Assembly (NCBI RefSeq): GCF_036365525.1 | Contig: NW_027140453.1 | Location: forward strand, 372,001-436,000 | Reading direction: 5' to 3' | DNA: 64,000 bases | DNA from: Heterodontus francisci | Lineage: Eukaryota | Shown here: positions 1 to 63,164 of the stretch, one piece after another | How positions within the stretch are numbered: position 1 is the stretch's first letter | How the letters are laid out: each line of letters starts with the position of its first letter | The notes under the pieces: generated by a model | The model's input: only the letters and a program-made list of their open reading frames with translations | What the model was told of the DNA's origin: nothing | Database searches by the model: none | Position numbers and translations under genes: made by a program

Positions 1-556
1 TAAACGGTGATCTGACTGAGGTGTTTAAAATGACTGAATGTGTTGATAGAATAGATAGAGATAAACTATATCCTGTTGTTGGGGGCGGGGCACGGGGGCA
101 GAACAAGTTGGTTTAAACCCAAACATCGAGCCAGGCTATTCAGGAGTGATGTCAGGAAGCATTTCTTCACACAAAGGGGCGTGGAAATCTGTTTCCTGTG
201 TGCAGATTAGTGTTTATAAGGTCAATAAAATTTTGCACGAATGGTGTGGTAGTGATTCCTTTAGAAGAACAACACTTTATCTTTAAGACAAGCAGTTAAA
301 CTATAAATGCATGTGCCAGAGTAGCATTTACCCCCACATCACGGGATTGTTTTTCATTACACCTCTGTTCATTNNNNNNNNNNNNNNNNNNNNNNNNNNN
401 NNNNNNNNNNNNNNNNNNNNNNNNNNNNNNNNNNNNNNNNNNNNNNNNNNNNNNNNNNNNNNNNNNNNNNNNNNNNNNNNNNNNNNNNNNNNNNNNNNNN
501 NNNNNNNNNNNNNNNNNNNNNNNNNNNNNNNNNNNNNNNNNNNNNNNNNNNNNNNC

Positions 557-1425
557 TGTCTATGGCTATCTAATTATCTGTCTGTCTACCTATTTCACTC
601 TCTATATAGAATCTTTATCCATCAATATTTATCTACAAATCTATCTGTTGATCCCTCTGTCTATCTATTCTCTAAACCACCTGTAGAACTCCCAATTCAT
701 TTCTTTCACTCTCGCTATCCAGTTATTTATCTATCTGTCTAGCCATCTCTCTATCAATCTGTCTATCTATTTCTCTATCTATTGATCCCTTTATCCAACT
801 GTATCTCTATCTATCTTATATGCCTATATATATATCTATACCTGCATTGCTCGATCTTTCTATTTAGTTCTCTATCATTATCTACCCACATATCACTCTA
901 TCTATCTATTGCTCTCTCCATCCATCACTTTCTTTCTTTATATCCAACTATCTACCTATCCATTTATTCCAACAGTTCATCTATCCATTTATTCATAACT
1001 TTCTTTAACTAACTATTTACCCATCACTCTGTCTATCTATTGATACCTCTATCCATCTATTTCGTTATATCCATCTATCTCTTCATCTCGATTTCTCTCC
1101 CTGTATCTCCCTCTCTATCTGTTGATATCTCTATCTATTGACTTTTCTGTCCATCTATATCTCCTATATGTCTATATAGGTCTATATGATCTGATATGAT
1201 ATGCCGATATATGTCTCTAGAGATCGATCTTTCTATCTAACGCCCTATCTCTCTATTAGTATCTATCTACCACTTTATCAATTGATGTCTCCATCCAACT
1301 CTCTTTATATCTATCAATAGCTTTCTATATTTATATCTATCTATCAATCCCTTTCTACCTATCAGTCAATCCTTGTCTATCTATCCATCTAACTCTCTTT
1401 CCGTCTATCCATCTATCTATCTATT
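557..1425 (+). repeat. Degenerate (TCTA)n simple repeat
   Basis: Imperfect TCTA/TCTG/TCCA tetramers next to the N gap at 374-556. Confidence 0.9.
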
Positions 1426-2069
1426 TTTATGTGCACCAGATTGACATTGGACTCTCATTGACAGGACCTGCATATAAGATCACAGACAGCAGGTGGCAGC
1501 AGAGATCAACATTTCATCCAATTCCATCATCCTGAGCTCCAGTGAGAAAGACAGGATGGAGGAAGGACAGGGGGCAGGAAAAAAGAAAGTTTGTTTGGGT
1601 GAAAAAGGGGGAAAAAAGAGATTGAAAGAACGTGACGAGAAAAGAGAGAAGAACTGCAAGAGAAATCCAAGGAAGGAGAAGAGTTTCGGAAAAAGGGGGC
1701 GGGACGGAATGAGAAAGTAGAGAAAGAAAAAGAGAAGGGAAAGAAAATGGAGAGAAGAAATCAGAACAAGAAAGAAAGACAGAGAGGAAGAGAGATAGAG
1801 ACAAAGAAAGATAAACAATGAAGGAGAGGAGTAGATTGAAAGGAATGACAAAAGATAGAAAATTGGTCGATACAATAACAGAAAGTTTGATTGGATGAAA
1901 TAAAAAAATTGATGGAAGAGAAGAATTAAAGAAAGGATAAAAGAATGATGGGGAGGAAGAAAGATAATTAAAATAAGGAACTGAAGACTGAAAGCATAAC
2001 TAAATGAATGATATACAAATGCTGAAGAAGGAAATTCAGCTGCAATAGGCATCACAGACTTTGCTGCAC

Positions 2070-2420
2070 TGACCCAGCAGCCACATTTCCTCTGCATGGA
2101 GGGGGCAGGTGCACGGGGCCCAGAGACAGCGTCTCACCCAGTAGGAAATGAGACAAACATGGGCTCAATCTGCCAGCCTCTGAGCGGAGAGCACAGCAAC
2201 AATAACAGGTGGCACTTTCCGTTAAACCACAGGGTGAAACTCGGGCGCAATGACCGACTTTACAAACCGTGCAGCGCGCCTGCATGCAGAAAGCTGAGCT
2301 GCACCATTTGAAAGTTCACATCCCACGGCCTCCGTTTGATATCTTTCCGTGCAGCTGCACAATGTTATTTTCCAGCTCCAGTCTTGTTTTGAGTTAATAT
2401 TTTCCGGAGGAAATGACACT
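2070..2420. promoter_or_regulatory. Candidate TRB 3' enhancer (Ebeta-like)
   Basis: Motif-dense unique island ~3.5 kb 3' of C: RUNX/ETS composite 2079-2093, E-boxes at 2106/2206/2352, RUNX AACCACA at 2225, several GGAA, TTTGAT/GATA at 2335-2343. Confidence 0.55.
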
Positions 2421-5070
2421 GTAACCGAATTTTAAAGTCACAGCACATTATCGCTCCGGTTCACTCAAGCAGACAATCACTTTAACAAGCAAAATGTTTA
2501 CCCCCATACAGTATGTAAGATTTCAGTGAACGTTTGGCCGACTCTGCTCTGTCTCATTGATATTTTCCAGTGTTACTGCTGAAATTTTTGCATTTAGGGT
2601 TGTTTTTTTTATATTTGGAGAATTGGAATGGGGAGTGAGCAAGTACTGGGAAAAAAGGGGAAGGGATGTGATTCGAGACCAGATTGTGTGTGTGAGAGAA
2701 AGAGCTAGGGAGAGCTGGGGAGAGAGACAAAGAGAGAGGGTGAGGGGAAGAGGGGGTAAGGGAGCGAGAGAGAGAGATAAACAAACAGAGGGGGCAAGAT
2801 ATGGAGAGAGAGAAAGACAGAGGGAAAGAGAAGGGAAGAGATGGAGAGAGAGAAAGACAGAGGGAAAGAGAGGGGAAGGGATGGAGAGAGACAAATAGAC
2901 AGACAGGATAGAATATGGAGAGAAAGACAGGCAGCGAGAGAGAGAGAGAGAGAGGGTGACAGAGAGACAGAAAGGCAGACAATGAAAAATACTGAGGAGT
3001 CAGCAACTTGGAAAACGGTAAGCGAGGTGATCGAGAGAGAGGGGGGAGGGGAGAGAGAGAGACAAACATGGTGAGTGATGGGGAATTAAGCAGGCAGCAC
3101 ACAGGAAGAGGAAGAAATGAGATAGAAAGGAAAAGAGGTAGGGGAATGGCTGCACAAGAGACACAGAGAGAAAGAAGGGATAAATGAAAGATACAGGGAG
3201 AGAAAAATAGAAAGAGAGAGGGAGAATGATAGTGGGGAATAGAAAAGGAGAGAAAGATGCAGGGCATTGAGAAAGGCAGGGGACGGATAGAGACAGAGAA
3301 CTGGTGAGATAGAGAGACCAGGAGCTAGAATAGTGGGTAGATAGAGCTGACAAAAAAGAGTTTCCGATTACCAAAAATGCAACGCTTGTAGCCTTCTAAA
3401 GCTGGTTTAAAGATTGACTCGATATCTACGTACATCAATCAGCCTGATAATGAAGGTATCTTTCAATGTCTGTAGCCAGTGAGAATGGGTTCATATTCCT
3501 GAGATGCAGGTCAGTGTGCACTGTTAGCCATCAGGAAAGAATGAACAGGCTGGGACACTTTTCTGTTGAATGAAGAAAGCTGAGGGGTGACCTGATAGAC
3601 GTCTTTAGGCTTACCGAGGGGTTTGATAGGGGAGATGGGGCCATAAATATAAGACACATCACTATTGAATCCAATCAGGAGAGACTTCTTTACCCAGAGA
3701 GTGGTGGGAATGTGGACCTCGCTACCACTTTAAGAAGAATAGCATCGATGCCTTTAAGGGGAAGTTGAGAAAGCACTTGAAAGAGAAAGGAATGGAAGGA
3801 GATGTTGCTGGGGTGAGATGAAGCATGGGTGGGAGGAGGCTCATGTGGAGCTGAAACACTGGCATGGACCAGACGGGCTGAATGGCCTGTTTCTGTGCTG
3901 AAATCTCTATGGAGCTGGGGTGCAGTTCAGACAAGGTCTCACTGAATGGCAGAACAGATGCGAGGATCAAAATGGCCCCCCTCTTGTTCCTAGGTTTCTA
4001 TGTACACAGCCTGGGTCTGGTGCAGTTAAACACAGAGGTGACTGGCTCGATCCCTCCCCAACAGTATCGCTCAGTAACCCCATAGGGCAGAAGGGAGACA
4101 GCAGCCACCTGTCATTACCCATCTCCCACGTGGACAATCCCTTGGCGACTGTGAGCGCCATTGCCCGCTCAGAGCAAACCATTTACAAAGGAGGGGTGCA
4201 GCGTCCTGGGTGCCAAAGCCGGGTTGAAATTGCCCAAATCTAGAACAGTCTGGTAAAGCACTCATCGGTGAAATTGCGTGGAAGGACAGCATTGTGGTAA
4301 GAATGGTCTGGGCTCATAATCCCAAGATATGAGTTCAAATCCCATCATGGTATCTGGGGAATTTCAATTCAGCTAATTAGCTCAAAATGTGCAATAAATA
4401 GCTAACATCAGCAATGGCGACCTTGAAACTGCGAGAGATTTGTATCAAACTCCACCTGGTTAACTCATGTTCTTTCGGGACGGAAATCTGCAGCCGTTAC
4501 CCGGCCTGGCCTACATGCAACTCCAGACCCACAGCAATGTGGTTGACTCATAACCGCTCTCTGAAATGGCCTAGAAAGACATTCATTTGTGTTCAGGAAA
4601 GTAGTTCATCGCCACCTTCTCAGTGGCTGTCAGGGATGGGTTACACATAGCAACAGGGAAACAGGAGACTATTTAGCCCACTCGAAGCTGCCATGTAGAG
4701 CGAGGAAGCGATTCTGCCCTCTCACGCCTGTTGCATAGAATTGGGTGGAGGAGGTCATTCAAACCAGGAGAGCCTGTTGCATTGCAACAGGAGGAGTCCA
4801 ATTCAGCCCCTCGAGCCTATTACATAGGCATAGTGTGAGGAGTCCATTAAACCCCGGCACATGTTCCGCCATTCAATTAGATCATGGAAGATCTGCACAC
4901 CAACCCCATTTCCCCATCTTTGCTCAATATCCCTTGATCCCGTTACCCAATAAAATTCATCTAATGTCCACCTGCATATTTTAATGTTGTTTGGAAATGT
5001 TGTGCCAAGCGCGTGGGGTAAAACTGAAATAATAGTGGAGAGAAACGGTTTTCTTTGTCGAAATATTCTA

Positions 5071-5076
5071 TTTATT
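5071..5076 (-). promoter_or_regulatory. Candidate polyadenylation signal for TRBC
   Basis: AATAAA on the minus strand ~780 nt after the stop codon. Confidence 0.45.
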
Positions 5077-5851
5077 TCTTAACCAGTGAACAAGAAAAGA
5101 AAAAAAAATGTAGAAGATCACAAGCGAGCTATCGATACTGGATCCACTGAGAACCCCACGACAAATAATGGACAATTATGAGCGCATTTTCCATTTGCAA
5201 TCGATGAGGTGTCTGATACAAATTTTTATAACATTTCTGCATTAACAGAAAAGGGAAAAAAGACATTAATAGTTGCACTAAACAGAACTTGAAGTTACAA
5301 TTTGTTTACTACTGCTTAATATTATACACGGCTTTACGAGAATTGCACGGAATGAGGGACTTAAGTTTCATGGAGAGATCAGCAAAGCTGGAATTGATCG
5401 CCTTGGCATTAACAACTGGCTTTTTCAAAGAGCTAGCACTTGCACGATGGGCCAAGTGGCCTCCTTTCGTCCTGTAAGGTTGTCTGTTTCTTTATAACGT
5501 TTCAAACAACACAGACTAATAATTAATAAACAGACAAAATAATCTGGAAAAAAAGTTTGCACGTTTCTCAAAGCTTCACCTCCTGAGACAACAGGAATTT
5601 AATACATTCACGAGAATATGAAAGGACTTATTCTAGTGGAAAAGACAGACTGGGGCTTAAAATTTCCTCTGTTCGTTTCCCGCAGTGGGGATGGGTATTT
5701 AAGGTTGTCCGCCAAAGTTACGCGGGTACAGCGGGAGTGGTTTAGACGAAATTCACCCCCGAGATATTCACAATAATCGTATTTTCTCTCCCCTTGCTCC
5801 CTCGTGTGTTCTGCTGCTTATCCATCTTTTGAGTTCATTAATTTGCGACGA

Positions 5852-5878
5852 TCAGTCAAACCTTTTGCTGTAAGACGT
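5852..5878 (-). CDS. TRBC: TRBC exon 4 coding part (cytoplasmic tail + stop)
   Basis: Poly-T tract...ataccag| then TSYSKRFD*; phase 0, matching exon 3. Confidence 0.9.
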   Translation of the reverse strand, partial: TSYSKRFD

Positions 5879-6823
5879 CTGGTATATGATAAAAAAAAGA
5901 GGGCGTTATTACCGTCATGGAATTATGGACTGATACAGAACAGAAGGAGGCCATTCGTCCCGCGTGCCTATACTGGCATTTTGAAAGAGCTGTCCAATTA
6001 GTCCCATTTCACAGTTCTTTCCCCTATAGCCCTGAGACTATTCCCTCCCCCACTACCTCAACCCCCTCAAACAAGTATTCATCCAATTCCCTCTTGAAAG
6101 TTACTACTGAATCAGCTTCCACCGACCTTTCAGCCAGTGCATTCTCAACCACAACAACTCGCTGGCTCAAAATATATTTCTCACCTGCCCCTCTGCTCCC
6201 TTGGCTAATCACCTTACAGCTGTGTCCTTGGTTGGGCAATCCTGCTGCCTCTTTGAAGCTGTTACCCCATTCATTGTCCTATCCAAACCATTCATCATTG
6301 TGCACACCTCTATTAAATCTCTCCTTAACCTTCCCTGATCCAAGGAGAACAATCCCAACTTCCGTATTCTCCTCACATCACTGAGGTCCCTCAACCCTGA
6401 TACCGTTCAAGTAAATCGCCCCTTCACCCTCTCCAATGACTCGACATCACTGTCCTGACCAGATCATCATGTGCATGAATAATCGAGACGAACCATGCAC
6501 ATGCTCTTTCCTGCTCATGCATTCCTAACCTTGCATATAAAGTCTTGTAAAATCACAATAAGTTCAATTATTTTCCAAGGGAAATTCCAGAACATTGACA
6601 ATTGTGTTCAACTGGATTAAATTGGTTGGTTAGTTTTGTGGGCACAGGAATGAATGGAAAGTGAATTGGTGTATTCCATCTGCGTGCAATAGGAATGCAA
6701 AACGTGGGCTCGTGAATATCGGATAATCACTCGTAATTTCAGTCTGGAATTCAGGAGAAACTTCTTTACCCAGTTTCACCATTACAATACCTATGTTAAG
6801 AACTTCAGTAATTTTAATCTTAC

Positions 6824-6930
6824 CTTAGTTTTCCAAGCAATTGTTGAGATGAAAATTGTATAAAAGATGCTTTTGCAGATGAGGATCAGGTATGTCAGTT
6901 TTGCCGTTGCCATGCTTTGGATTTTCGCCT
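6824..6930 (-). CDS. TRBC: TRBC exon 3 (connecting peptide + transmembrane)
   Basis: (E)AKIQSMATAKLTYLILICKSIFYTIFISTIAWKTK carries the antigen-receptor TM motif Y.IL..KS..Y with the charged Lys. Acceptor tttacag|, donor |gtaag. Confidence 0.95.
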
Positions 6931-8300
6931 CTGTAAAGTAAATGTAACAGAAAATGTTGCAATCTCTGTTCTCTCAAGGCAAGAAATGCTACTGCGTGAA
7001 AATGTAATGTGTGTCAGTGAAGCAGCCCAATGTAAGGGTCGAGCTGCGAAAGCAGAACTGATCTCCCTTTGACGCAAGGAGCCCTGGGGTATTCCTTACT
7101 ACAAATGGAGTTCAGCAATATGGCCGATCTGAATTGGGGCCGCTGTAACTTCTGTGTCAGCTATGGCTCACGTATGTATCAGATCTAGCTGATTGGGTAA
7201 CGCTCTCCTGTCTGAGTCGTACGATTGTGGGTTCATGCCCCAGTCCAAAGACATGAACCCCATAATCCAGACTGACTCTCCCAGTGCCAGTAGACAGCGT
7301 GTGTGCTGCACTGCAACTTTGGAGGAACCTTCTTTGAGATGATGTGTTAAACTAATTTAACCTCTGGGAAGTGGAACTGTCCCTCTTATCTCCACGCCAG
7401 ATTCACACTATCAACTCCCAAGGAATTGTAAGTTTTAAGACAGGTGTACACAGCTCCCTCCCCTCCCATCCCCAGGCGTCTCCTCTCCCTCATCACACGG
7501 CAGCATATTTCCCTGAGGTCGTGAACCCAAGAGGACCGTGAGGTTATATCATTCGACTAGGCTGATTTCGAAATTCCCACGGCCTTTCCCTCCCAGAGGA
7601 GTTTTCTCATAAACTCGTTGTGCATGATAGTATGTATAACTGTAAAACTACAGCTTGGAAATGTTGAAATGAGTATATACATGAAATGTCTGACACAGTA
7701 ATAATTCCAGAATTATTGGTGAATATTTTTTGAGTCATGGAGTCATTACAGCACAGAAAGAGGTCATTCGGCCCATCGAGTCCATGCAGGATCTCTACAG
7801 AGCAATCCAATCAGTCCAGCTCTCCCCTTCCATCTCCATTGCCCTGCAAGTTAATTACCCTCAACAGTCCGTCCAGTTTCCTTATGAAATCATTCATTAT
7901 CTCCATTTCCACCACCCTCGTAGACAGTGACTTCCAGGTCATTACCACTCGCTGCATAAAACACTTCTTCCTCACATCTACCCCCCCACTGCATCTTTTT
8001 CCCAAAGCCTGAAAACTGTGACCGCCCCCCCCCCCAGTCCTTGTGCCAGCAACTCATGGGGACAACTTTTCTTTGTCTACCTATTGTAAACCTGTCATAA
8101 TCTTGTACAACTCTGTCAAATAGCCCCTCAATCTCCTTTTCTCCAAGGAGAACAACCCAGGTTCTCCAATGTAACTTTGTAGCTAAAATTCCTCATCTCT
8201 GGAACCATTGTGGTAAATCTCCTCTGCACCCTCTCAAGGACCCTCACCTCCTTTACAAAGTGTGGCGACCAGATACAGATAGAAGCAGATAGATATTCAC

Positions 8301-8321
8301 CTTTACTTATACCGCACATTT
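8301..8321 (-). CDS. TRBC: TRBC exon 2 (hinge, interchain Cys)
   Basis: 21-nt exon (E)MCGISK with polypyrimidine ttttcccag| acceptor and |gtgaat donor; phase 1 at both ends, matching exons 1 and 3. Confidence 0.93.
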
Positions 8322-8641
8322 CTGGGAAAAGAAAGAAAAATCAATAAACATTCAGCATCAGAATATTTTATGAAATCACTGTGTAAATGTAGATTATCAC
8401 AATTGAGTCCCGCACTGTAGTCTAATATATTGAGAGTCATTTTAATTGAGTGTTTAACCATATCTTCCCCTTTACACTACAATATTGTTCTATTTCATGA
8501 ATTATTTAATTATTTATTGACTTACTGATACATCTACTTGCTTATTCGTACTTTCATAAGAGCACAGGTGCGATATAAATGCAACTTTCTGATTTCTTTG
8601 AAGCTGAAATAAAATGGTATTGGTCTCACTAGTGTGCCTAC

Positions 8642-8992
8642 CTGCTTTGACAGCTAATGTTGAACTGCTTGTTGCAGGCACTGATTCGTTAGTGTAGAGA
8701 TCTACTCTGCACTCAACGTTCTTGGACCGAGCCCAATCTAGGGCGTCGAATCTCAGCCGGCTGCTGATGCTGTAAGATGTATTTTCTTTTGATAGGATGG
8801 CATTGAGATCAGTGTGAATGTTCGTGTCATTAGCATCTTTCTCCTTGCCATCGACAAGCCAGTGGATCTTGATGTTGTCGGGGTAGAAGTCGCTGACGAG
8901 GCAGACCACAGTGGCTTTTTTCTTTTCTCTAATCTCTTCGGGAGAGGGCTCAAAGACAGTAACTTTGGCAGGCCTAATCGTATCGTTTTCGC
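8642..8992 (-). CDS. TRBC: TCR beta constant region exon 1 (Ig C1 domain)
   Basis: Encodes (G)ENDTIRPAKVTVFEPSPEEIREKKKATVVCLVSDFYPDNIKIHWLVDG...YSISSRLRFDALDWARSKNVECRV. Has the C1-set Cys/Trp/Cys and the TRBC-typical FEPSxxEI..KATxVCL and SSRLR motifs. Acceptor cctgcag| and donor |gtagg; 351 nt. Confidence 0.97.
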
Positions 8993-9085
8993 CTGCAGGA
9001 AAAGTAAATGGAGACAATATGGATGAGTATGAAACCCGTCTTGAGAATTTTAAACCACCAAACAATATCAACCTTTCAATCCTAG

Positions 9086-9138
9086 CCAGAGCAGTTAATT
9101 TTGTGCCAACTCCAGAATAAACCTCTCTGTTTCCCGAA
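9086..9138 (-). pseudogene. TRBJ: Atypical C-proximal TRBJ (donor lost, in frame with C exon 1)
   Basis: SGNREVYSGVGTKLTAL (F to S in FGxG). Donor GT replaced by CT. Weak RSS: CACCGAT-12-GTAGAATCA. Confidence 0.75.
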
Positions 9139-9399
9139 CACCGATCAGTCATAAAACGTAGAATCAGTTTGCAACCTCGACATGCTTTTGTACATTTTAA
9201 CCCAAAGTGGCAGAAAATGATCATCTCAACCTCTTAGTCATTGAGGGAAGTACAAGTCTGTCTCATTATGAAAGAGGTTCTCCTGTCTATCTGAAAAGTG
9301 TTATCCTGAACTCTGGGCCAGCCTGTTCTCAATAAAAAGGCTATCACTCACCTTGTCCCATTATCTAGAGCCCTTTCCTATCAGGGAGGTTATGGGGAA

Positions 9400-9960
9400 C
9401 ATTTCTAAAGCTCTGGTTAGGCCACAACTAGAGTTTTGCAGCCAGTTCTGATCACCACATTTGAGGAAGGTAGTGAGTGTCCTTGAGAGGGTGCAGAGGA
9501 TATTTAACAGAATGGTTCCAGGGATGAAGGATTTTAGCTACAAGGTTAGGTTGGAGAAGCTGGGATTGTTCTGCTTGGAGCAAAGGAGATTGAGGGGAGA
9601 TTTGATGGCAGCGTACAAGATTATGACGGATTTAGATAAGGTAGACAAAGAAAAACTTCACCCATTAGTTGTTGGTACAAGGACCAGGAGAGACAGATTT
9701 CTGGTGCTGTGCAAAAGATGCAGGGGGGGTGTGAGGGGGGACATTTTTATGCCACGTGTGGTAATGACCTGGAACTCGCTGCCTGCAAGGGTGGTGGAAG
9801 CGGAGACAATGAATGATTTCAGAAGGAAATTGGATGGACACTTGAGGCAAATTAACTTGCAGGGCCATAAGGATAGAGCGGGTGAGTGGGACTGATTGGA
9901 TTGCCAGACAGAGAGCTGGCATGGACTCGATGGGCTGAATGGCCCCCCTCTGTGCTGTAT
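9400..9960 (+). mobile_element. CR1 LINE 3' fragment
   Basis: LERVQR...LEKLGLFCLEQRRLRGDL...RVVMTWNSLP. Similar fragments at about 3530-3900(+), 5915-6450(-), 7735-8270(-), 10050-10780(-), 14600-15130(+), 27750-28330(+), 40600-41725(-), 43010-43650(+). Confidence 0.9.
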
Positions 9961-24131: not shown

Positions 24132-24653
24132 CACATCAGCAAATCATGTTGCACGAACCCAGTCGAAAACAGTTTGCTAAAAGTGACCTGCTCAGCGTTT
24201 AGGAAGCACTGGTCAAGACAATCAGGACACACAAAGCAGCTTACAGCCAATGAAGCAGTTTGTTTAGGAAGTGGTCACCACAGGGAGACAGAGCAACTGA
24301 TATTGTACCAAGGAAGTCCCATCAAACAGCAGTGAGATTAATGAGTAGATCATTGTGATGTTGGTTGAGCATCAATATTGGTCCCAAGACACCGGGGTGG
24401 TGTTTCAGGGGTTGAAGAGTAACCAGTTTTCACACAAATAACACACAGTTATTCTCTTTTCCAGAGGAATGCTCTACGTTATAAAGCTGGACCATTCTGA
24501 GGCATCTACAAGATTGAAAGGGCCCAGCTCCCGCCATAATCCAGAGGAGATGTTTATTCGTTTACTCTGTTGCCACTGCTCTTCTGCTAATCTTCCTCGA
24601 GGTATGCAGAGCGAGGTTTTTGTACGGAGGCTGCATTGGATTCTATCACAGTG

Positions 24654-24666
24654 TCCCCCCTGTCCC
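24654..24666 (-). CDS. TRBD: TRBD2 (C-proximal D segment)
   Basis: GGGACAGGGGGGA (vertebrate Dbeta core GGGACAGGGGG). Flanked by a 5' 12-RSS (24667-24694) and a 3' 23-RSS CACTGTG-23-ACAAAAACC (24615-24653). Confidence 0.97.
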
Positions 24667-26307
24667 CACGGTGATAGACACTCATACAAAAAAGAACGCG
24701 AATTTTGCAAGGCCCTGCCTCTGAAAAGACTCCCGAGGGCTTCACTTGGTGAAGTCAGTTGAGATTGAGCTGCTGAAAGTTTTTTAGTCCTTTGGACCAA
24801 AATTAAAGGCCGTTCATTCCGTCTCAAAACTGTTAGCAGGAACAGGAGGTGGCCATTCCGCCCCTTCTCAGCCTGCTACACAGGTGCAGCAAGAGGCCAT
24901 TCAACCCCTCTAGACCTTGTTACACAGGAAGAAGAGGAGGCCCATTCAGCCCCTCTTGAGCTGCTTACACAGTAACAGGCCCATTCATCCACTCAAGCCT
25001 CCTTCCTTTCCTCTACTTCCTTCCTTCCTTCCTTCCTTCCTTCCTTCCTTTCCGTCCTTCTGTCCTTCCTCCCTTCCTTCCTTTCATGGTTTTTTTTCTT
25101 GCTTGCTTTCTCTCTTGCTTTCTCTCTCTCCATTCCATCTCTCTGTTGCACCCCTTCTCCCCTTCACCCTCCCCCATCCCTTACCCGCTTCATGATCCGC
25201 ATTCTCTCTTCGACAACCTGCAGGACCTCAGGACATACCGGCCACGGGACCTCAAACAGAAGCCACTTACTCTAGACAGTAAATCGTTCACACTGTTATC
25301 TCTTATCTTATCACTCAGAGAGACCCATATCTGCCAAACTAGTGCAAGTTTCCCAGGTGTCGTGTTGATGTGTGCGGTGCTGTTATCATTCCTGCAGATC
25401 TCATAGCACACCAACCCCCATCGCCATGCACCTGACATGAGGGAGAAAGGAATAGAAGTTTAGATGGAGTAGGGTGGGGGTGGGGAGAGGAGGCTCGTGT
25501 TCAGTATCACCACTGGCTTCATGACACATTTCTGGGGGGATTTGAGCAAATTTTGAAAATGAATAATCCGCCCTCTGAGAAAATGGGTCAAAAAAGGAAC
25601 TCCTTCCTTAACAACACTGTGGAAATACCTAAAACACATTGAACGCAGGCGTGACGCTAGCAAAATGATAATGTTGCTGGGCTAGTAATCCAGCAGCCCG
25701 GGTTAGTGTTCTGGTTGTGTGAATTCAAATGGCCGCAGATGGAATTTAAATTCAGCTGATTCATAAAAATCTGTCAGGGTGCCATGAAACTGTCGTCGAT
25801 TGTCATAAAAACCCATCTACCATCTTATATGGGACTCCAAACCTGCAGCATGCAGTTGACTGTTAACTGCCCTCTGAAATTGCAAAGCACTCAGTTCAAG
25901 GGCAATTAGGGATGGGCAACAAATGTTGGCCTTGCCATCGGTGCCCACATCCCATGACAAGAATAAAAACATGGCCTAACAAACCACTCAGAAGGCAATT
26001 ATGGGTGGGCAATAAATGCATCCCAGCACGAATTAACAATGACTTTTCCTGTTCATTTTTGTCTGTATTTTGCTCCCCATCTGTGTCTCTCTGTATATGG
26101 TTGCCTCCCTAGCCTTCTTCCACTCTCCACCTCGCCTTTCCTCTATGTTTAATTGTTTTAACCTTTGCTTCTTTACTGCAATGCTTACGGTTTATTTTTA
26201 CAAATTTCATGTTCTCTCCCCTTTCTTCAAACGGAAGGGAGCAAACTGCCCAACAGTTTCAGTGCTGATTGAGCCCACTGATATATTTCGACCAATATTC
26301 TACTCAC

Positions 26308-33379: not shown

Positions 33380-33904
33380 CACGTCAGCAGATCTCGTTAC
33401 ATCAACCCGGTCGGAAACTGATTGCTAAAAGTGACCTGCTCAGCATTTCGGAAGCACTGGTCAAGATTATCAGGACGCACAAAGCAGCTTACAGCCAATG
33501 AAGCAGTTTGTTTATGAAGTGGTCACCACTGGGAGACGCAGCAACTGATATTGTACCAAGAAATTCCCATCAAACAACCGTGAGATTAATGAGCAGATCA
33601 TTGTTTGTGATGTTGGTTGAGGGATCAATATTGGTCCCAGGACACCAGGGTGGGGTTTAAAGGTAAAAGAGTAACCAGTTTCCACACAAATGACACACAG
33701 TTATTCTCTTTTCCAGAGGAATATTCTAGCTTATAAGGCTGGACCATTCTGAGACATCTTTATGATGAAAAGGGCCCAGTTCCCGCCATAATCCTGGGCC
33801 ATGTTGACTCGTTCACTCTGTTGTCACTGCTCTTCTGCTGATCCTCCACCAGGTGTGTAGAGCGAGGTTTTTGTACGGAGGTTGCATTGGATTTTATCAC
33901 CGTG

Positions 33905-33917
33905 TCCCTGTTGTCCC
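33905..33917 (-). CDS. TRBD: TRBD1 (V-proximal D segment)
   Basis: GGGACAACAGGGA flanked by a 5' 12-RSS (33918-33945) and a 3' 23-RSS CACGGTG-23-ACAAAAACC (33866-33904). Confidence 0.97.
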
Positions 33918-34059
33918 CACAGTGATAGACACTCATACAAAAAAGAGGAACGCGAAATTTACAAGTCCCCGCCGCTTAAACGGCTCCCGAGGCTTTCACC
34001 TGGTGACGGCAGTTGAGATTGAGGTGCTGAAATTTAGTTAGACCTTTGTAGCACAATTA

Positions 34060-35520
34060 AAGGCCATTCAGCCCCTCTCAAATCTGTTTCACATGAACAG
34101 GAGGAGGACATTCAGCCCTTCTCCAGTCTGTTACACAGGAACAGGAGGAGGACATTCAACCCCTCTCCAGTCTGTTACACAGGAACAGGAGGAGGACATT
34201 CAGCCCCTCTCCAGTATGTTACACAGGAACAGAAGGAGGACATTCAGCCCTTCTCGAGCCTGCTACACAGGAACAGGAGGGGGACATACAGCCCCAATGC
34301 AGTCTGTTACACAGGAACAGGAGGAGGACATTCAGCACCTCTCCAGTCTGCTACACAGGAACAGGAGGAGGACATTCAGCCCCTGTCGAGCCTGTTACAC
34401 AGGAACAGGAGGAGGACATTCAGCCCCTCTCGAGCCTGTTACACAGGAACAGGAGGAGGATATTCAGCCCCTCTCCAGCCTGCTACACAGGAACAGGGGG
34501 AGGACATTCAGCCCTTCTCCAGTCTGTTACACAGGAACAGGAGGAGGACATTCAACCCCTCTCCAGTCTGTTACACAGGAACAGGAGGAGGACATTCAGC
34601 CCCTCTCCAGTATGTTACACAGGAACAGAAGGAGGACATTCAGCCCTTCTCGAGCCTGCTACACAGGAACAGGAGGGGGACATACAGCCCCAATGCAGTC
34701 TGTTACACAGGAACAGGAGGAGGACATTCAGCACCTCTCCAGTCTGCTACACAGGAACAGGAGGAGGACATTCAGCCCCTGTCGAGCCTGTTACACAGGA
34801 ACAGGAGGAGGACATTCAGCCCCTCTCGAGCCTGTTACACAGGAACAGGAGGAGGATATTCAGCCCCACTCCAGCCTGCTGCACAGGAACAGGGGGAGGA
34901 CATTCAGCCCCTCTCCAGTCTGTTACAAAAGAACAGGAGGAGGACATTCAACCCCTCTCCAGTCTGTTACACAGGAACAGGAGGAGGACATTCAACCCCT
35001 CTCCAGTGTGTTACACAGGAACAGAAGGAGGACATTCAGCCCCTCTCGAGCCTGTTACACAGGAACAGGAGGAGGACATTCAGCCCCTCTCGAGCCTGTT
35101 ACACAGGAACAGGAGGAGGACATTCAGCCCCTATCCAGTCTGTTACACAGGAAAAGGAGGAGGACTTTCAGCCCCTCTCGAGCTTGTTACACAGGAAAAG
35201 GAGGAGGACTTTCAGCCCCTCTCCAGTCTGTTACACATGACCGGGAGGAGGACATTCAGCCCCTCTCCAGTCTATTACACAGGAACAGGAGGAGGACATT
35301 CAGCCCCACTAGAGCCTGTTACACAGAAACAGGAGGAGGCCATTCAGCCCCTCTCCAGTCTGTTACACGGGAACAGCAGGAGGACATTCAGCCCCTCTCG
35401 AGTCTGTTACACAGGAACAGGAGCGGGACAATCAGGCCCTTTGCAGTCTGTTACACAGGAACAGGAGGAGGACATTCAGCCCCTCTTGAATCTGTTACAC
35501 CGGAACAGGAGGAGGACATT
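34060..35520 (+). repeat. 44-bp minisatellite upstream of D1
   Basis: Unit AGGAACAGGAGGAGGACATTCAGCCCCTCTCCAGTCTGTTACAC, about 33 copies, running into an N gap; 396-bp higher-order repeat. Confidence 0.95.
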
Positions 35521-36899
35521 NNNNNNNNNNNNNNNNNNNNNNNNNNNNNNNNNNNNNNNNNNNNNNNNNNNNNNNNNNNNNNNNNNNNNNNNNNNNNNNN
35601 NNNNNNNNNNNNNNNNNNNNNNNNNNNNNNNNNNNNNNNNNNNNNNNNNNNNNNNNNNNNNNNNNNNNNNNNNNNNNNNNNNNNNNNNNNTCCCTCTCAA
35701 TTCACCCCTTATCCCAATCCCTGCCTCCGTTCCTTACCCTTTTCTTTACCTGCATTGTCCCTCCACAACCTGCAGGATCTCAGGAAGCACCGGCTACGGG
35801 TCCTCAAACAGAACACTCTTAATGTATACAGTAAATCGTGCACACTGCAATCTCTTAACCTATCACTCAGAGAGTCCCAGGTCTGCCAAACCAGGGGTGT
35901 GCAAGTTCCCAGGTGTTCTGTTGCGGTGCTGTTATCATTTCAGCTGATCTGTCTGCACACCAACAGCCATCGCCCATGCATCTGGTCCTCAACTATAACA
36001 TTGAGGGTTTTACTCTTTTGTTCGGTTCTTATGCTGCTTGCTCTTCAGATGAAGGTAACGCGAGGTTATGGGTTGAAGAGGTTCAAAAAGTGTCTAACAA
36101 TAAAGGCGGACGTTGAATGAAGGATTGGGATATGGACACAAAACATTTTCAAAGAAAGGCGATTATGGAGTCATCAAAGTAAGTACATTTCCCTTTGTCC
36201 TTTTGCAAACATGGCACAAAGTAGGAATCCATTGCTGCTTCTAAATGTTCACTGGACATTATAGAGCGATGAGAAGTCATGTTCAACTTGTATAGAATCT
36301 TCCTTCGACCACAGTTAGAGCACTTTTCACAGTTCTGGTATTCATTTTAAAGAGATATAGAGATACAGGAGAAGGGGCAAAAAAGTAATGACAAGGATGA
36401 TATCAGAACTGAGAGGTTACAATTATCAGGAAGGGCTATAAAGAAAAGGCTGAGCAGGTGATCTGATGGAGGGCTTTAAGATTATGAAAGAGTTTTTGAT
36501 AGGGTAGACGTGAAAAAGATGTTTTCACTTGTGGGGGAACAGGAACTCCGAACCATCAACAGAAAGATAGTAACTAATAAATAAAATCGGGAATTCAGGA
36601 GAAAATTCTTTACCCAGAGAGTGGGAGGATGTAGGGAGTGGGATAGGGCGAATAGCGGAGATGTATTCAAGAGGGAATCTGGATAAACAAATGGGGGGAG
36701 GGGAGATTTGGAAGGATCTGTTGATGGGGTGAGATGAAGCAGGGAGCGAGGAAGCGCGTGTGGAGGATGAACACCAGCATGAATGTGTTGGGCCGAATGG
36801 CCTGTTTCTTTGCTATTGGCCTCAGGACACTGTCCAAGGGATATAGTGCGTCTCACCTGAGAAAGCAGACCAGCCACTGACTTTACATCTCAGGAGGAA

Positions 36900-44760: not shown

Positions 44761-45974
44761 AGTCTTATATGGCTGCGTTGGAGTCGAAACTGCCCTGGGA
44801 CAAATTCCTCCCAGCACGCCAGGGAATTCTGTCAAGAGCAGGCTGGTTATCATCTGAACAGGTCAGTGTTGAAGAGATTTACCATGACATGTGGAAGTAT
44901 GTCAATGAGACACCGGTCATTCTTTTTTCAATAGGGGCCCTAAGACTGTGTTTGCCCCGTGGTATTGATCCATCCAAATCCAGATTTGATAGATTTCCTT
45001 CAGTGAGGAACTTTTTTGGGATGCATTCGAGGATTAATTTGAGACATGACATGTGACAAGAGCTGCCTGCTTGGGAGGAACAGGGACTTTGGGCCTGACA
45101 TTTTGGTGCTTTCCACACCTCATGCATGGGCCCTGTTGTAGATCAAGTCACCGCAATTGGTTTATTTCTGTTCTGTTACGGGATGAGGGCTGGGGAGGGC
45201 CACCTTTATTCCCAAGTCTAACCGCTCTTGAGCATACTTCTTCTTGAATGCAACTGCGTGGCTGACCAGGCCCATTCCTCAGGGCAGTTAAGGGTGAACA
45301 GCACTGCTGCCGGGGTCTGGAGTCACTGTGAGTCCAGACTGGGTGAGGGAGGCAAAATTCCTTCCCTAAAGGATATCACTGAACCAGGTGGCTCTTTCCG
45401 CCAATCCAGCAGCTTTATGCTGAGCATCATTGCTGGAATACAACTACTGTTACAAAGGCTACCATCATCAACAACGACATTATTGGTCGACAAGGATGTC
45501 AGAAGATGAACGAGGTGTCTTGGTTTTTTTTGGCATCTAGCAAATCCTGCATTCCTAAGCCTACCTCTTCAGAATGCAGCCTTCCATACCAGTGCCCTGT
45601 TTAGCTTAGTGCTAGAACCCAACACAGTTTAATTCAGAGAGTACAGATCTGAGAGATGCCGGATAAACCTTATTCTTGAGATTCACTGTGACACCAGTGA
45701 CGGTCTCAGTCAGCTCGATGGACCCTCCACCAGTTGGACCAAGTTTCAGCTGAAAGCCCGGCCCCAGCGCCTGGGAATTCCTGCTGCGCCTTTGTTAGAC
45801 CAAAGTACGTGAATTGAATGCAGTTATGAGACAGTGCATTCCAGGAAGGTGGGGATTGCTCTACCTAGGTATATTGGAATATAATTTCTGAAAATGAGAT
45901 GGATAAATTAGCGGTTTGTCAATAAAAATATACTGATACGCAGATTAACCACAAGCATTATTCATGGTTGGCGC

Positions 45975-46630
45975 TGGACAGGTTGAGAGAGCAGTTAATA
46001 AAGCATACAGTATCCTGGGCTTTATTAAAAGGGGCAGAGAGTACAAGAGCATGGAAGTAAGTTGCACTTGGACAAGACACTAGTTCGACCTCAGCTGGAG
46101 CATTGTGTCCAGTTCTGGGAGCCGCACTTGAGGAAAGAAATGAAAGAATTGGACAGAGTGAGGGAAAGATTCAGGAGAATGGTTCCACGGGTGAAGGACC
46201 TCAGTTATGATGATAGATTGGAGAAGTTGGGATTGTTTTCCTTGGAGGAGAGAAGGCTGAGAGGTGATTTGATAGAGGGATTCAAAATCATGAGGTGTCG
46301 GGACAGAACAGATAGAGAGAAACTGCTCCCACTCGTGAAAGGATGGAGAATGAGAGGGCACAGATTTAAACTAATTGGAAAAAGAAGTAAAAGTGACATG
46401 AGGAAAAAATTGTTTCACACAGCGAGTGGTTAATGTCTGGAGTGCAGGCCCAGAGAGTATGATGAGGGCACGTTCAATCGGGGCATTCAAAAGGGACTTA
46501 TGAAAAAGGAAGAATGTGCAGAGTTACGGGAAGAAGGCGGGGGAATGGGACTAAGTGAATTGCTCATTCGGAGGGCCAGTTCTGACACGATGGGCCGAAT
46601 GGCCTCCTGTACTGTACCAATTCTCTGATT
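45975..46630 (+). mobile_element. CR1 LINE 3' fragment
   Basis: LVRPQLEHCVQFWEPHLRK...LGLFSLEERRLRGDLIE. Confidence 0.9.
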
Positions 46631-54950: not shown

Positions 54951-54954
54951 TAAG

Positions 54955-57389: not shown

Positions 57390-57449
<60 letters not shown>

Positions 57450-59155: not shown

Positions 59156-60550
59156 CCTGCAGACTGGGGGCTGAATCTGTTCATGAACCAATATCAGGCG
59201 GCTGAAGATAAAGCAGAGAGCGGAAATGACAGCACTGGAAACAGGGTTTCCTTCTGACCCCTCACTTCTGGGTATGACAGAATAATAACACCCCCTGGCC
59301 GAAAGGAGATTGAATAAGGAACTGCTTCCCGTCTGTATCTGGCTCCCGTTGCTTGTGTCTGATTGGTGTTGTATAGGGTAGCTCTTTCGAACAGCTGGGC
59401 CAGGCTCGATGGGCTGAATGGCCTTTGCCTCTGCTGTATGATTCTATAAATATATAAGACACATCAAGTTGCTTGTTTGTATTAGGCAAATAAAGATTTA
59501 TTTTCCCTGTGTTAAACGACAATTCAAGGGCTATGTTTTACATTGGGGTGAAATCTTAGATACTTTGAAAAGCGACAGTGTCATGAAGAAGTGGGTTAAC
59601 TGTTTTAAACAGATGCTCAAACCGTCGTCAGGAGGCAGGTGTTCCAGTGAGAGACCTATCTGGGGAGGTGTCTCACTTTTGCATTGTATGAATCATCGGG
59701 GACATGTACAACAGGGAGCTATGTGTAACTCTTGTCACATACCACCGACAGCTCATTCAACAGGACCATGAGCCCATTTACCCCACCTCGGAATCTGTTC
59801 TTTACAGGTAGAGGCTGCCTTATCGAGAAGGATCTGAGCACCTTGCTGCAGTATTTTTAATAATTCATAATGTATTGATATACTCTGAGTCGAAGGAGAG
59901 CAAGAAGATGAAACTATCAGTAAAATACAAATCATGATATATCAATAATTAAACTGGTATGGTGCAAATAATGGTGTTCGATAAATGATAAACGTCAGAT
60001 AAATTTGGATGCATATTTAGAGGTGAGAGACAGAGAGATAAATCGATGACAAATATATATATGATCGAGATAAATAGATAGATAAATGGTGCAAATAACC
60101 AAAAATGGACAGCGAGATAGATAAATAGATAGATACAGATGGATAGATAGATAGATACAGATGGATAGATAGATACAGTTAGATAGATNNNNNNNNNNNN
60201 NNNNNNNNNNNNNNNNNNNNNNNNNNNNNNNNNNNNNNNNNNNNNNNNNNNNNNNNNNNNNNNNNNNNNNNNNNNNNNNNNNNNNNNNNNNNNNNNNNNN
60301 NNNNNNNNNNNNNNNNNNNNNNNNNNNNNNNNNNNNNNNNNNNNNNNNNNNNNNNNNNNNNNNGATCGATAGACAGATAGACAGACAGACAGATAGATAG
60401 ATGCAGAGATGCACAAAGAGACACAGAAACTCGCAGATAGTCCGAGAGGCAGAAACACACTGAGATAGACAGACAGGCTTATCTCCCACAAGTGCTTTCC
60501 TCCCCCTTTATAGTTTTTGCTGAACTCCGGCACCTTTCTGAGTCACTGTG

Positions 60551-60849
60551 CTGTCTCCAGGCACAGTAATACACAGCTGATTGATTTTTCCACAGACTGG
60601 AGGACTCCAGGTAAAAATAAGTGTTGTTGGGTCTCCTGGCGGTGAAACCGTCCACCTCACCGGAGGAAATGACCGTTCCAGCAGAGGTGGAATAGAAAAA
60701 GTTCTCGGGCTTATGGTCCGGATGCCACCAGTGCCGGAAGAATGCAGAGCCAGCTACTGCTTCTGTGTAAATACACTGGATACTAACTGGACAGCCTGGG
60801 GAATGGGATATGGAAGGGGGAGACTGTTGGTTCAGCACGGCCCCTACAT
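60551..60849 (-). CDS. TRBV: TRBV V exon (CAW family), ORF lacking the conserved Trp
   Basis: Paralog of V 52016: GCPVSIQCIYTEAVAGSAFFRHWWHP...SAVYYCAWRQ, with WYR changed to RHW. 23-RSS CACAGTG-23-GCAAAAACT at 60512-60550. Confidence 0.88.
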
Positions 60850-60851
60850 CT

Positions 60852-60896
<45 letters not shown>

Positions 60897-63164
60897 ACCC
60901 AGGGACAAGATTTAAATTGACATCGGCCACGATGAGGGGACAGGCACGATGGGCCGAACGATCTCCTGTGTGCCCTAAATGTCCCGTGTTTCTTTGTAAA
61001 AAGGGAGAGGTGGGAGAGGGAGAGATGCACAGAGAGAGAGAGAGACTCAGAGAAAGACATAGAATGATATAGAGTGAGAGAAAAGGAGAGAAGCAGAGAC
61101 AGAGAGAGAGAGAGTCAGAGAGAGAGAGAAGCACACAGACAGAGGGAGAAAAACAGCAACAATCTATACATGGACAACAGACGTGAAGGAGCTAAGAGGA
61201 CAGGGAGAGAGAGAAAGAGAGACAGAGAGAAAGGGAGAGTGGGAGGGACAGACATTGAGGTACATATATCGTTAGACAGAGAGAAAGAGATATGTAAATA
61301 AATATTGATAGATAGAGATTCTATATAGATAGATAGTGAAATAGGCAGATTATACAGATAATTAGATAAAATAGATAGACAGATAGATAGAATGATGGAT
61401 AGAGAGACAGATAAATAGACGGAGAGATAGATAGATATAAAGATAGATATGCAGATTCATAGATAGATAGATTCAGAGAAAGGGAGATACAGAGAGATAT
61501 ATGGTGCAATAGACATTCTGATAAAGACCAGAGGTGTAATGAACAACAATACTGTCATGTATGGGGTAAATGTCACTCTAACACGTGCTTTTATTGTTTA
61601 GCTGCCAGTCTTAAAAATAAAGTACTGTTGTTCTGAAGGATTCACTATCACACCATTTGTACAAAATGAATACATTTTATTTACCTTCCAAACACTAATC
61701 TGCACACAGGATACAGATTTCCACTCCCCTTTGTGTGAAGAAGTGTTTCCTGACATCACTCCTGAATAGCCTGGCTCGAAGTTTGGGTTTAGACCACCTT
61801 GTTCTGCCCCCGTGCCCCGCCCTCAACAAGAGGAAATAGTTTATCTCCATCTACCCTATCAACCCATTCAATCATTTTAAACACCTCAGTCAGATCACCA
61901 TTTAATCTTCTATACCTGAGGGAATAAGGAACAAGCAATGTAAACATGTTGGGTGTTGCATTTCCTTCACCCTTGATTGACTGATCAAAGATATTTTCAG
62001 AAACTCTGAACACAGGAAATCTTTCATAGAATCAGAGACTGGTTACAGTACAGAAGGAGTCCATTCCGCCCATCGAGACCATGCCAGCTCTCTGCAAGAT
62101 CAACCCAGCTAGTGCAACTCCTCCTATCTCTCATGTCAATTCAATTTGTCGCCATAACCACCTGCAAATTCCTCTGCGCTGTTTCCTTCGCATGCTCTTG
62201 TGGAAGGACTTTGTCAGCACAACACAGCAACAGAATCGCATTGCACAGAGAGACACAGAGACAGGAAAGGCACCGTCAGGATGTGTGGTTATCAGAGTGC
62301 AGCTGTAAATGTTTCAACATGTTCACGGATGCAGCAAGAAAAAAACAGCCTGTTTTGTGGGTTTAACCGACACACATTTGTATTTTTCCACTCCTAGGCC
62401 CGAGGCAAAACAGTAGGTTAAAGGGTAAGGTAACAAAGTGTTATGTTCCTGGGCTAGTAATGTAAAGGCCTGGGCTAATAACCTGGAGATGTGAATTCAA
62501 ATCCCAGCATGCTGGATTATTTCAATTCCCTTCATTAGATAAAGCTTGATTGATGAAAAGCTGCTCTCAGTCATGGTGAACATTAACCTACAGTATTGGA
62601 CAAAAAACTCATCGTCACTGAGAGAAAGAAACCTGCCATCCTTATCCGCTCTGGCCTAAGAGGTGACTCCAGTCCCACAACAATATGGTTGATTCTTAAA
62701 GGGCCCTCTGAATTGGCCGGGCAAGACAGTCGGTCATACAAAAGCTGTGACGGGAACAGACAGCAATGGGGGTGGGCTCATCGCCATCTTCTCAAGGACG
62801 GTGAGGTGGTGGGCACTGAATACTGCATAACAGTGCCACAACCACATCCTGTGAATGAAAGCAGATAGAGAGATTGAGAAATATAATAGAATAGAGGCCT
62901 CAACACGGGTGTGTGTACACTGCATGGCCTGTCCTCACCCCCAGACACATCATCTGGTCTGTTTCAATCTTTCCCCTCACTGCTCTGTAGCTAACCCCAG
63001 CCTCCTCCATGCAAGCGATACATGCACAGTTACTTGGCTGAGCTCCCATCCAGCATCCCTCATTAACATTCCCCAGTAACCCTCCATCCTAAACTCCCAC
63101 AAAATGCTCATGTGCCTGCTGTGTTATTTCCACCAACTTCACCAATCCCTTTCGACACCCCTAA

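What the first reader, a model, noticed from the sequence alone, without database searches (positions are those of the whole stretch)
1..373. Inverted copy of V-array flank located 3' of C beta: footprint of an inverted downstream V region
Seen: bases 1-372 are a close reverse-complement paralog of ~61525-61905, the DNA just upstream of the CAW-family V 60551. The match includes a CR1 fragment plus ~180 bp of unique sequence across the same junction (e.g. TGTGTGCAGATTAGTGTTT, CATTACACCTCTG), and both copies continue into TCTA repeats. So this is a segmental inverted duplication, not just two repeat copies. Inference: TRBV30-like V cassette(s) exist or existed in opposite orientation downstream of C, as in tetrapods, and exchanged DNA with the 5' array. 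Such Vs would rearrange by inversion.
Basis: partly seen in the sequence, partly recalled or inferred. Interest (0 to 1): 0.8.

Follow-up and report, generated by a model that had tools for sequence, protein, structure and literature searches.

The report
Inverted flank duplicate behind shark C-beta
About 650 bases of non-coding DNA that lie next to one V gene of the horn shark's T-cell receptor beta locus occur a second time, backwards, behind the constant gene, but no V gene lies next to the second copy, so it looks like an old rearrangement scar and does not show that a backwards V gene exists there.

Summary
Bases 1-373 are a reverse-complement paralogue of 61523-61904 (86% over 382 columns, E 5e-109). 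Homology resumes after the N run (556-663 vs 61382-61268, 87 of 101 ungapped columns).

Both copies cut a CR1 LINE at the same base (191|192 and 61714|61713). In the reads, 372-384 contigs per run carry the family's normal continuation at that point. The non-CR1 part is not a common repeat. Only one contig at least 80% alike lies on it, against 97 to 128 or more on the CR1 part.

The window is a Heterodontus francisci TRB locus on the minus strand. Copy 1 lies about 5.2 kb beyond the C-beta stop codon.

The inference of an inverted V is not supported in the window:
- No plus-strand V (best E 2.0).
- No plus-strand 23-spacer RSS.
- Homology stops about 400 bp before the V60 exon.
- The N run is collinear with 141 bp of microsatellite.

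Earlier unchecked notes of this scan report inverted beta-like cassettes behind C-beta on other pieces of this genome.

The parts
1..191 (+). Copy 1, part a: 3' fragment of a CR1 LINE ORF2 in sense orientation, cut off at base 191 within the ORF. The window edge cuts it on the left.
   Evidence: Translation shows the CR1 C-terminal motif (ORFs). 176 of 191 bases are identical to the partner. Family contigs continue differently after the equivalent base 61714.
192..373 (+). Copy 1, part b: low-copy non-CR1 segment ('U').
   Evidence: Only self and partner hits in the window. 152 of 182 bases are identical to the partner. No Rfam match.
374..555 (.). N run of 182 letters, not read and not filled. 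By collinearity it corresponds to partner 61383-61522 (about 141 bp of TCTA-type DNA).
556..665 (+). Copy 1, part c: start of the TCTA-rich array, still specifically homologous to the partner.
   Evidence: Best hit 84 bits against 64 for the next array. Alignment. 87 of 101 ungapped columns identical.
666..1430 (+). TCTA-type degenerate microsatellite with no specific homology. It occupies the interval where a V exon and RSS would lie (about 1074-1421) if the partner's spacing held.
   Evidence: spacing is my own arithmetic
61714..61904 (-). Partner, part a: the same CR1 fragment in sense on the minus strand. Its 5' end is near 61919.
   Evidence: High contig counts and depth over 61713-61919, falling in bin 61920-61988.
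61523..61713 (-). Partner, part b: the U segment.
   Evidence: One 247-letter contig (61452-61691) is the only record laid there in each of 4 runs.
61268..61382 (-). Partner, part c: TCTA-rich segment homologous to 556-665.
60512..60859 (-). V60 ('CAW' family) V exon with its 23-RSS (heptamer at 60550). It lies next to the partner block but outside the duplicated part.
5852..8993 (-). C beta gene: exon 1 8643-8993, exon 2 about 8305-8322, TM exon 6824-6931, last coding exon ending about 5855.

Best explanation
This is an old, low-copy, inverted duplication of non-coding DNA inside one horn-shark TRB locus. At least about 0.65 kb is visible, and the window edge cuts it on the left.

The copied block has three parts: a CR1 LINE fragment that had already lost its 3' end, about 180 bp of low-copy DNA, and the beginning of a TCTA-rich microsatellite. 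One copy abuts the upstream edge of the V60 cassette. The other lies about 5.2 kb beyond the C-beta stop codon, on the other strand.

Shown: both copies descend from one rearranged ancestor, the block is not a dispersed repeat at 80% likeness or more, and no V or RSS lies next to copy 1 within the window.

Inferred: the block was copied by a repair or replication template switch, or by breakage and rejoining at microsatellite DNA, because its visible end lies in such DNA. It has no function of its own. It is a neutral structural scar in a locus that is prone to rearrangement.
For: - Match statistics.
- A shared CR1 truncation. In each of the 4 runs, 372-384 contigs go loose before 61714. Their consensus, reverse-complemented, reads the normal CR1 continuation (N-S-L-P-Q-K-A-V-E-A), and neither copy has it.
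- Copy 1 shares the partner's minority letter at 3 of the 5 listed positions where the CR1 family majority differs. At 1 of 5 it has the family letter, and at 1 of 5 a third letter.
- In 61500-61595 every listed difference comes from 1 contig.
- Homology is collinear on both sides of the N run, so 1-373 is correctly joined and oriented relative to 556 onward. From 556 the sequence is N-free as far as C beta.
- No V, RSS or V60-body homology beside copy 1.
- The V52/V60 cassette homology (67%) ends at 61285 / 52744, so the block is not part of the older V-cassette unit.
Against: - The left end is unseen, so the true size and content of the duplication are unknown.
- V60 is bracketed by TCTA-type arrays on both sides (61290-61525 and 59950-60530). 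A deletion between such arrays could remove a V and leave no relic. 'No V was copied' and 'a V was copied and deleted' therefore cannot be told apart here.
- Divergence is uneven: K2P 0.083 in the CR1 part against 0.188 and 0.154 in the rest (Fisher p = 0.016). One simple neutral event does not predict this.
The tool also warns that a filter leaves records out.
- All four runs are one sample, perhaps the sample that was assembled.
Confidence: 0.6

Rival explanations
1. Copy 1 is what remains of an inverted, TRBV30-like V cassette that was copied from the V60 end of the array to a place 3' of C beta. The V has since been deleted, for example by recombination between the TCTA arrays that flank V60-type cassettes, or further such Vs lie just left of the window.
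For: - Polarity and place fit. In the partner the block runs towards V60. In copy 1 it runs towards the tail of C, about 5.2 kb from the stop codon.
- The interval where the V and RSS would sit (about 1074-1421) is exactly the TCTA array that ends at 1430.
- V60 has TCTA arrays on both sides.
- Inverted V genes 3' of TRBC are reported for most amniotes, salmonids and some amphibians (PMC11754216, passages read). One is also called a shared feature of the beta and delta loci (PMC12227049, one passage).
- Unchecked earlier notes of this scan report inverted V-D-J-C beta-like cassettes behind C beta on other pieces of this genome.
Against: - No V-like sequence on the plus strand in 1-9000 (best E 2.0).
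- 0 plus-strand 22-24-spacer RSS among the 20 sites found.
- Homology ends about 400 bp before the V60 exon, and nothing beyond the array (1430-6500) matches V60's surroundings.
- The block lies outside the V52/V60 cassette unit.
- Flanking DNA still 84-92% identical means a merely decayed V would still be visible.
Confidence: 0.18
2. The two arms are the duplicated breakpoints of an ancient inversion of the 61-kb core that they bracket (five V segments or relics, two D, the J array, C). Staggered breaks are known to leave inverted duplications at inversion ends. I recall this model; no call supports it.
For: - The arms are inverted and bracket the whole proximal V-D-J-C block.
- The ends lie in break-prone microsatellite DNA.
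- The partner's proximal end (about 61268) lies within about 20 bp of another old rearrangement boundary, the end of the V52/V60 homology at 61285.
Against: Nothing in the window shows that genes outside the arms have the opposite orientation. 61905-64000 holds only CR1 fragments and a 38/118-bp tandem array. Only one block is seen duplicated, and the outer flanks are unseen.
Confidence: 0.1
3. Two members of an old, small, composite dispersed repeat family (CR1 piece, U segment and microsatellite tail) that landed here independently.
For: - The block starts near a 5'-truncated CR1 end (about 61919) and ends in a microsatellite, as LINE-derived units do.
- The two parts differ in divergence.
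- Copies below 80% likeness could not be seen.
Against: - Only one contig at least 80% alike lies on U in four contig sets of about 2.6 Gb each, against 97 to 128 or more contigs on the CR1 part.
- No third copy in the window at word size 7.
- No detectable homologue of U upstream of V52 (80 of 200 shuffles score as high).
- The only two detected copies lie 61 kb apart in one locus.
Confidence: 0.07
4. An assembly artefact: a small piece placed or turned wrongly next to the N run, or a misjoin inside the TCTA array.
For: - 1-373 borders an N run.
- The window holds 4 N runs of 170-185 letters, all in low-complexity DNA.
- No listed contig bridges the U|CR1 junction or the whole stretch.
- Several TRB-bearing pieces with an identical C exon 1 exist in this assembly.
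Against: - At 84-92% identity copy 1 is a true second sequence and not a mirrored copy of the partner.
- Homology to the partner is collinear and in the same orientation on both sides of the N run.
- 556 onward is N-free up to 35520 and includes C beta.
Confidence: 0.05

Closest known systems
TRBV30 (mouse Trbv31)-type inverted V segment 3' of the last TRBC
   Same: Position downstream of C beta. The polarity of the copied V-flank points back towards the tail of C. The source is next to a forward V of the same locus.
   Different: The defining element, a V exon with a 23-RSS, is absent beside copy 1. The duplicated part stops short of the V in the partner too. Whether V60 belongs to the clade of inverted TRBVs was not tested; the PDB sequence search of its V exon gave only generic V-domain hits.
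Low-copy inverted segmental duplications and inverted duplications at inversion breakpoints
   Same: Two copies in cis in inverted orientation. They contain a repeat fragment plus unique DNA across a shared junction, and the ends lie in break-prone simple sequence.
   Different: It is small and old: about 0.65 kb visible at 86% identity. That is below the customary thresholds of 1 kb or more and 90% or more, which I recall from memory. One end is unseen, and no inversion was demonstrated.
Inverted V-D-J-C TRB loci of salmonids and pike (PMC10464911, passages read)
   Same: Inverted duplication within or around a TRB locus in a fish. Remnant inverted Vs there are read as relics of a lost locus.
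   Different: Those are whole loci placed head-to-head with Vs in the middle. Here a sub-kilobase non-coding block lies tail-side of C, with no gene segment in it.
CR1 LINE 3' fragments
   Same: 1-191 and 61714-61919 carry the CR1 ORF2 C-terminal coding motif and belong to a very abundant family.
   Different: Both copies lack the CR1 3' end at the same base. A retrotransposed CR1 would keep it, so the pair did not arise by two insertions.

Membership tests
TRBV30-type inverted V cassette | A V exon (Ig V domain with the conserved Cys...YxC) at the site | tested here: not met
   tblastn of the four window V ORFs, E up to 10. All hits with E < 1e-3 are on the minus strand at 47-61 kb. The best plus-strand hit in 1-9000 has E 2.0 and is low complexity.
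TRBV30-type inverted V cassette | A 23-spacer RSS on the strand opposite to C, pointing towards C | tested here: not met
   Consensus scan found 20 sites. The four known V RSS were recovered on the minus strand. 0 plus-strand sites have a 22-24 spacer, and there is no site at all below 11060.
TRBV30-type inverted V cassette | Location 3' of the last TRBC in inverted orientation | tested here: met
   This holds for the copied flank only. Copy 1 is inverted relative to the V60 flank and lies 5.2 kb beyond the C stop codon.
TRBV30-type inverted V cassette | V belongs to the clade of 3'-inverted TRBVs | not tested
   There is no V at the site. For the neighbour V60, the PDB sequence search gave only generic V hits, and no tree was built.
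Inverted segmental (low-copy) duplication | Two copies sharing unique DNA and a derived junction, not explained by a dispersed repeat | tested here: met
   Shared CR1 truncation. U has only self and partner hits in the window. One contig lies on U at 80% likeness or more.
Inverted segmental (low-copy) duplication | Customary size and identity thresholds (1 kb or more, 90% or more; recalled) | tested here: inconclusive
   About 0.65 kb is visible at 86%, but the left end is cut by the window.
CR1 LINE insertion | Intact 3' end with variable 5' truncation | tested here: not met
   Both copies stop at the same internal base, while the family goes on: 372-384 loose-end contigs per run.

The most novel reading that the evidence does not exclude
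The block is a surviving trace of the step that a published model postulates for the TRB locus: a forward V family being copied to an inverted place 3' of C (PMC11754216, discussion passage). Here it is caught in a shark, with a CAW-type V flank as source. The V itself has since been excised between its flanking TCTA arrays or lies just left of the window. The pair of inverted arms would then bracket the whole proximal V-D-J-C core and could once have mediated its inversion.
Probability: 0.15. Interest if true: 0.65.

Novelty: new member of a known kind. Interest (0 to 1): 0.27.

Why it matters
As it stands this is a small structural scar. It shows that non-coding DNA moved, inverted, between the V array and the region behind C beta in a shark TRB locus. 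That fits the known plasticity of antigen-receptor loci.

It would matter more if the unseen DNA to the left holds an inverted V. It would then bear on whether the inverted 3' V of tetrapods (TRBV30/31) goes back to the common ancestor of jawed vertebrates. In the held library I found no paper that answers this for sharks.

Tried and rejected
1. U (192-373) as the normal 3' end of a CR1 family. Rejected: family contigs continue with the usual ORF2 end after 61714, and neither copy does.

2. U as a common repeat. Rejected at 80% likeness or more, and no third copy exists in the window. Older copies are not excluded.

3. The block as part of the V52/V60 cassette unit. Rejected: that homology ends at 61285 / 52744 and does not resume beyond the block. 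U has no detectable homologue upstream of V52 (80 of 200 shuffles score as high).

A CR1 fragment does lie upstream of V52, in the same orientation and at a similar distance from the RSS (53159-53464 against 61714-61919). Its 48-bp, 73% match is what any two CR1 copies would give (0 of 200 shuffles reach it). It is only a weak hint that the V-side copy is the older one.

4. A V hidden beside copy 1. Not found.

5. A second, divergent C exon on the plus strand in 1-9000, as earlier notes report on other pieces. Not found with the window's own C as query (best E 7.3). A C only 30-36% identical might be missed.

6. Known RNA families in 1-9500. None: one chance match at 23 bits against a gathering score of 60.

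7. TRBV30-likeness of V60 through PDB sequences. Uninformative.

8. Earlier findings by sequence and by words. Blank.

9. Supplements of the papers were closed and were not asked for. The accession tables of PMC11754216 may show which shark TRBVs were in its tree.

Full report
WHAT THE WINDOW IS

The window is a T-cell receptor beta locus of the horn shark, Heterodontus francisci, read on the minus strand.
- C exon 1 (8643-8993) is 100% identical over 116 residues to two NCBI models of that species (P0004, P0005). It is 99% identical to the published cDNA-derived protein P0006, and 53-61% identical to C beta of other sharks.
- The TM exon is at 6824-6931, and the last coding residues are at 5855-5875.
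- V segments with 23-spacer RSS end at 47388, 50455, 52015 and 60550, all on the minus strand. A V relic lies at 58463-58648.
- Two D-like segments (about 33904-33918 and 24653-24667) and a long J array lie between the Vs and C.

Bases 1-373 align collinearly with the reverse complement of 61523-61904. The match is 85.9% over 382 columns with E 5e-109, and it is listed first of 31 inverted pairs.

Bases 1-191 are the C-terminal coding part of a CR1 LINE. By itself that part would prove nothing, because it has 6 further, more distant relatives in the window.

The next 182 bases (192-373) are different. In the window they match only themselves and the partner (2 hits of 2, E 3e-42).

In the four Logan contig sets (one sample, likeness 80% or more), the partner's version is covered by a single 247-letter contig (61452-61691). 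At 61500, 61572 and 61595 all depth comes from that one contig.

Three cautions apply:
- The tool warns that depth from contigs is not copy number and that a filter leaves some records out, so I rely on contig counts.
- Copies less than 80% alike are invisible.
- All four runs are one sample, perhaps the one that was assembled.

COMMON DESCENT OF THE TWO COPIES

In each run, 372-384 contigs of the CR1 family become unlike the window just before 61714. The reverse complement of their consensus reads the ordinary CR1 continuation, N-S-L-P-Q-K-A-V-E-A. Other CR1 copies in the window also have this continuation (ORFs).

Both copies instead switch to the U segment after the same base (191|192 and 61714|61713). 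A retrotransposed LINE keeps its 3' end, so this junction arose once and was then duplicated.

One search lists five positions where the family majority differs from the partner. Copy 1 shares the partner's letter at three, has the family letter at one, and has a third letter at one.

EXTENT OF THE BLOCK

After the 182-letter N run the homology resumes. The region 556-668 has its best match at 61378-61268 (78%; 84 bits against 64 for the next TCTA array). The alignment contains several non-repetitive strings, and 87 of 101 ungapped columns are identical.

Beyond about 665 / 61268 both sides are low-complexity DNA without specific similarity. The visible block is thus about 0.65 kb. Its left end is cut by the window, and only about 15 bases of the CR1 fragment should lie beyond base 1, because the family signal drops after about 61919.

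Homology is collinear and in the same orientation on both sides of the N run, and 556 onward is N-free up to 35520. So 1-373 is correctly linked and oriented relative to C beta, unless there is a misjoin inside the TCTA array.

The N run corresponds to about 141 bp of TCTA-type DNA in the partner, so it has no room for a V. I did not fill it or look it up.

WHAT IS NOT THERE

- tblastn of the four V ORFs and the C ORF against the window (E up to 10) gives no plus-strand V-like hit in 1-9000 better than E 2.0. Those weak hits are serine/leucine-rich low complexity.
- A consensus RSS scan recovered all four V RSS and the D and J sites. It found no plus-strand site with a 22-24 spacer among its 20 sites, and nothing at all below 11060.
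- Sensitive BLASTN of 1430-6500 against 45000-64000 gave 33 rows, all interspersed repeats or low complexity. None pairs this region with the V60 body or its downstream flank (repeated for 1400-2700).
- In the partner the duplicated part ends about 400 bp before the V60 exon.
- The older V52/V60 cassette homology (67%) ends at 61285 / 52744, within about 20 bp of the block's end, and does not resume beyond the block.

DNA that still matches at 84-92% would leave a V that had merely decayed easy to recognise. A V was therefore either never part of the copy or was removed outright.

One way to remove it without trace is recombination between the TCTA arrays that flank V60 on both sides (61290-61525 and 59950-60530). 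The 875-bp array at 556-1430 spans exactly the interval where a V and its RSS would be expected (about 1074-1421 by the partner's spacing, my arithmetic). This is inference, and I could not test it.

UNEVEN DIVERGENCE

The CR1 part differs by K2P 0.083, the U part by 0.188, and the part after the N run by 0.154. Fisher's test on 1-190 against 191-373 gives p = 0.016. The change lies near base 217 and not at the junction.

A gene-conversion tract entering from the left, or local rate differences, could explain it. I leave it unexplained.

The direction of copying is also open. U has no detectable homologue upstream of V52 (80 of 200 shuffles score as high). A CR1 fragment at a similar distance upstream of V52 is only a weak hint that the V-side copy is the original.

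WHAT COULD NOT BE DONE

The window is not the contig of either NCBI model. Apart from the C exons, the exons of P0004 and P0005 match the window at only 81-86%. At least three TRB-bearing pieces therefore exist in this assembly.

Earlier notes of this scan are AI notes that I did not check. They describe an inverted V-D-J-C cassette of a divergent beta-like chain, lying tail-to-tail with C beta, on other pieces of this genome. If the same cassette lies left of this window, inverted Vs do exist behind C beta in this species. Copy 1 would then sit between the two constant genes and not next to a V.

COMPARISON WITH WHAT IS KNOWN

- An inverted V 3' of TRBC that joins by inversion is standard in mammals (PMC11264764, abstract and passages; PMC10464911, introduction passage).
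- It is reported for most amniotes, salmonids and some amphibians, together with a model in which a V family was moved to an inverted 3' place (PMC11754216, passages).
- One passage of PMC12227049 calls an inverted V after C a shared feature of the beta and delta loci.
- Salmonids and pike have whole inverted V-D-J-C loci (PMC10464911, passages).
- My four searches found no paper in the held library that maps a shark TRB locus with or without such a V. Subscription papers and supplements were not visible.

The present feature shares place and polarity with the TRBV30 arrangement but lacks its defining parts, so I do not file it there. It is best filed as a small, old, low-copy inverted duplication.

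VERDICT

- Observation: confirmed.
- Segmental inverted duplication: supported.
- Inverted V region: unsupported within the window and untestable beyond it.
- Interest is modest unless the left flank shows a V.

Noticed in passing
window 24653-24667 and 33904-33918 (minus strand): Two D-like segments, each flanked by a 12-spacer and a 23-spacer RSS with perfect nonamers. J segments follow each of them, and no constant gene lies between.
   Followed up: partly
window 5852-9224; proteins P0004, P0005: Two NCBI gene models of H. francisci, on contigs of 1.57 and 1.99 Mb, share C exon 1 100% with the window. Their other exons match the window at only 81-86%. The assembly therefore holds at least three TRB-bearing pieces with an identical C exon 1 and clearly diverged surroundings.
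   Followed up: partly
window 9080-9131 (minus strand): A J segment lies directly upstream of C exon 1 and reads in frame into it in ORF 8514-9224.
   Followed up: no
window 145-154 and the partner's equivalent: AGTGATGTCA, which I recall as the conserved V-beta promoter decamer, lies inside the CR1 part of both copies. The same CR1 sequence is present on more than 100 contigs, and it lies over 800 bp upstream of the V60 exon. It is probably a coincidence.
   Followed up: no
window 58463-58648 (minus strand): A partial V relic between V52 and V60: 39-51% identity to V47 and V50 over 45-62 residues. No RSS was found next to it.
   Followed up: no
window 34093-36120, 36890-39600, 63166-64000: Large tandem arrays that give long artefactual ORFs. 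The last has a 38/118-bp period, with 21.7 copies of the 38-bp unit, and runs off the window.
   Followed up: no
window 4302-4584 and 62464-62731: A SINE-like element in direct orientation on both sides of the locus, 65% identical, with moderately many contigs in the reads. It is unrelated to the inverted block.
   Followed up: no
window 53159-53464 vs 61714-61919 (minus strand): CR1 fragments lie upstream of V52 and V60 in the same orientation, at similar distances from the RSS (about 1.15-1.45 kb and about 1.17-1.37 kb). This may be a remnant of the old V-cassette duplication or chance.
   Followed up: partly
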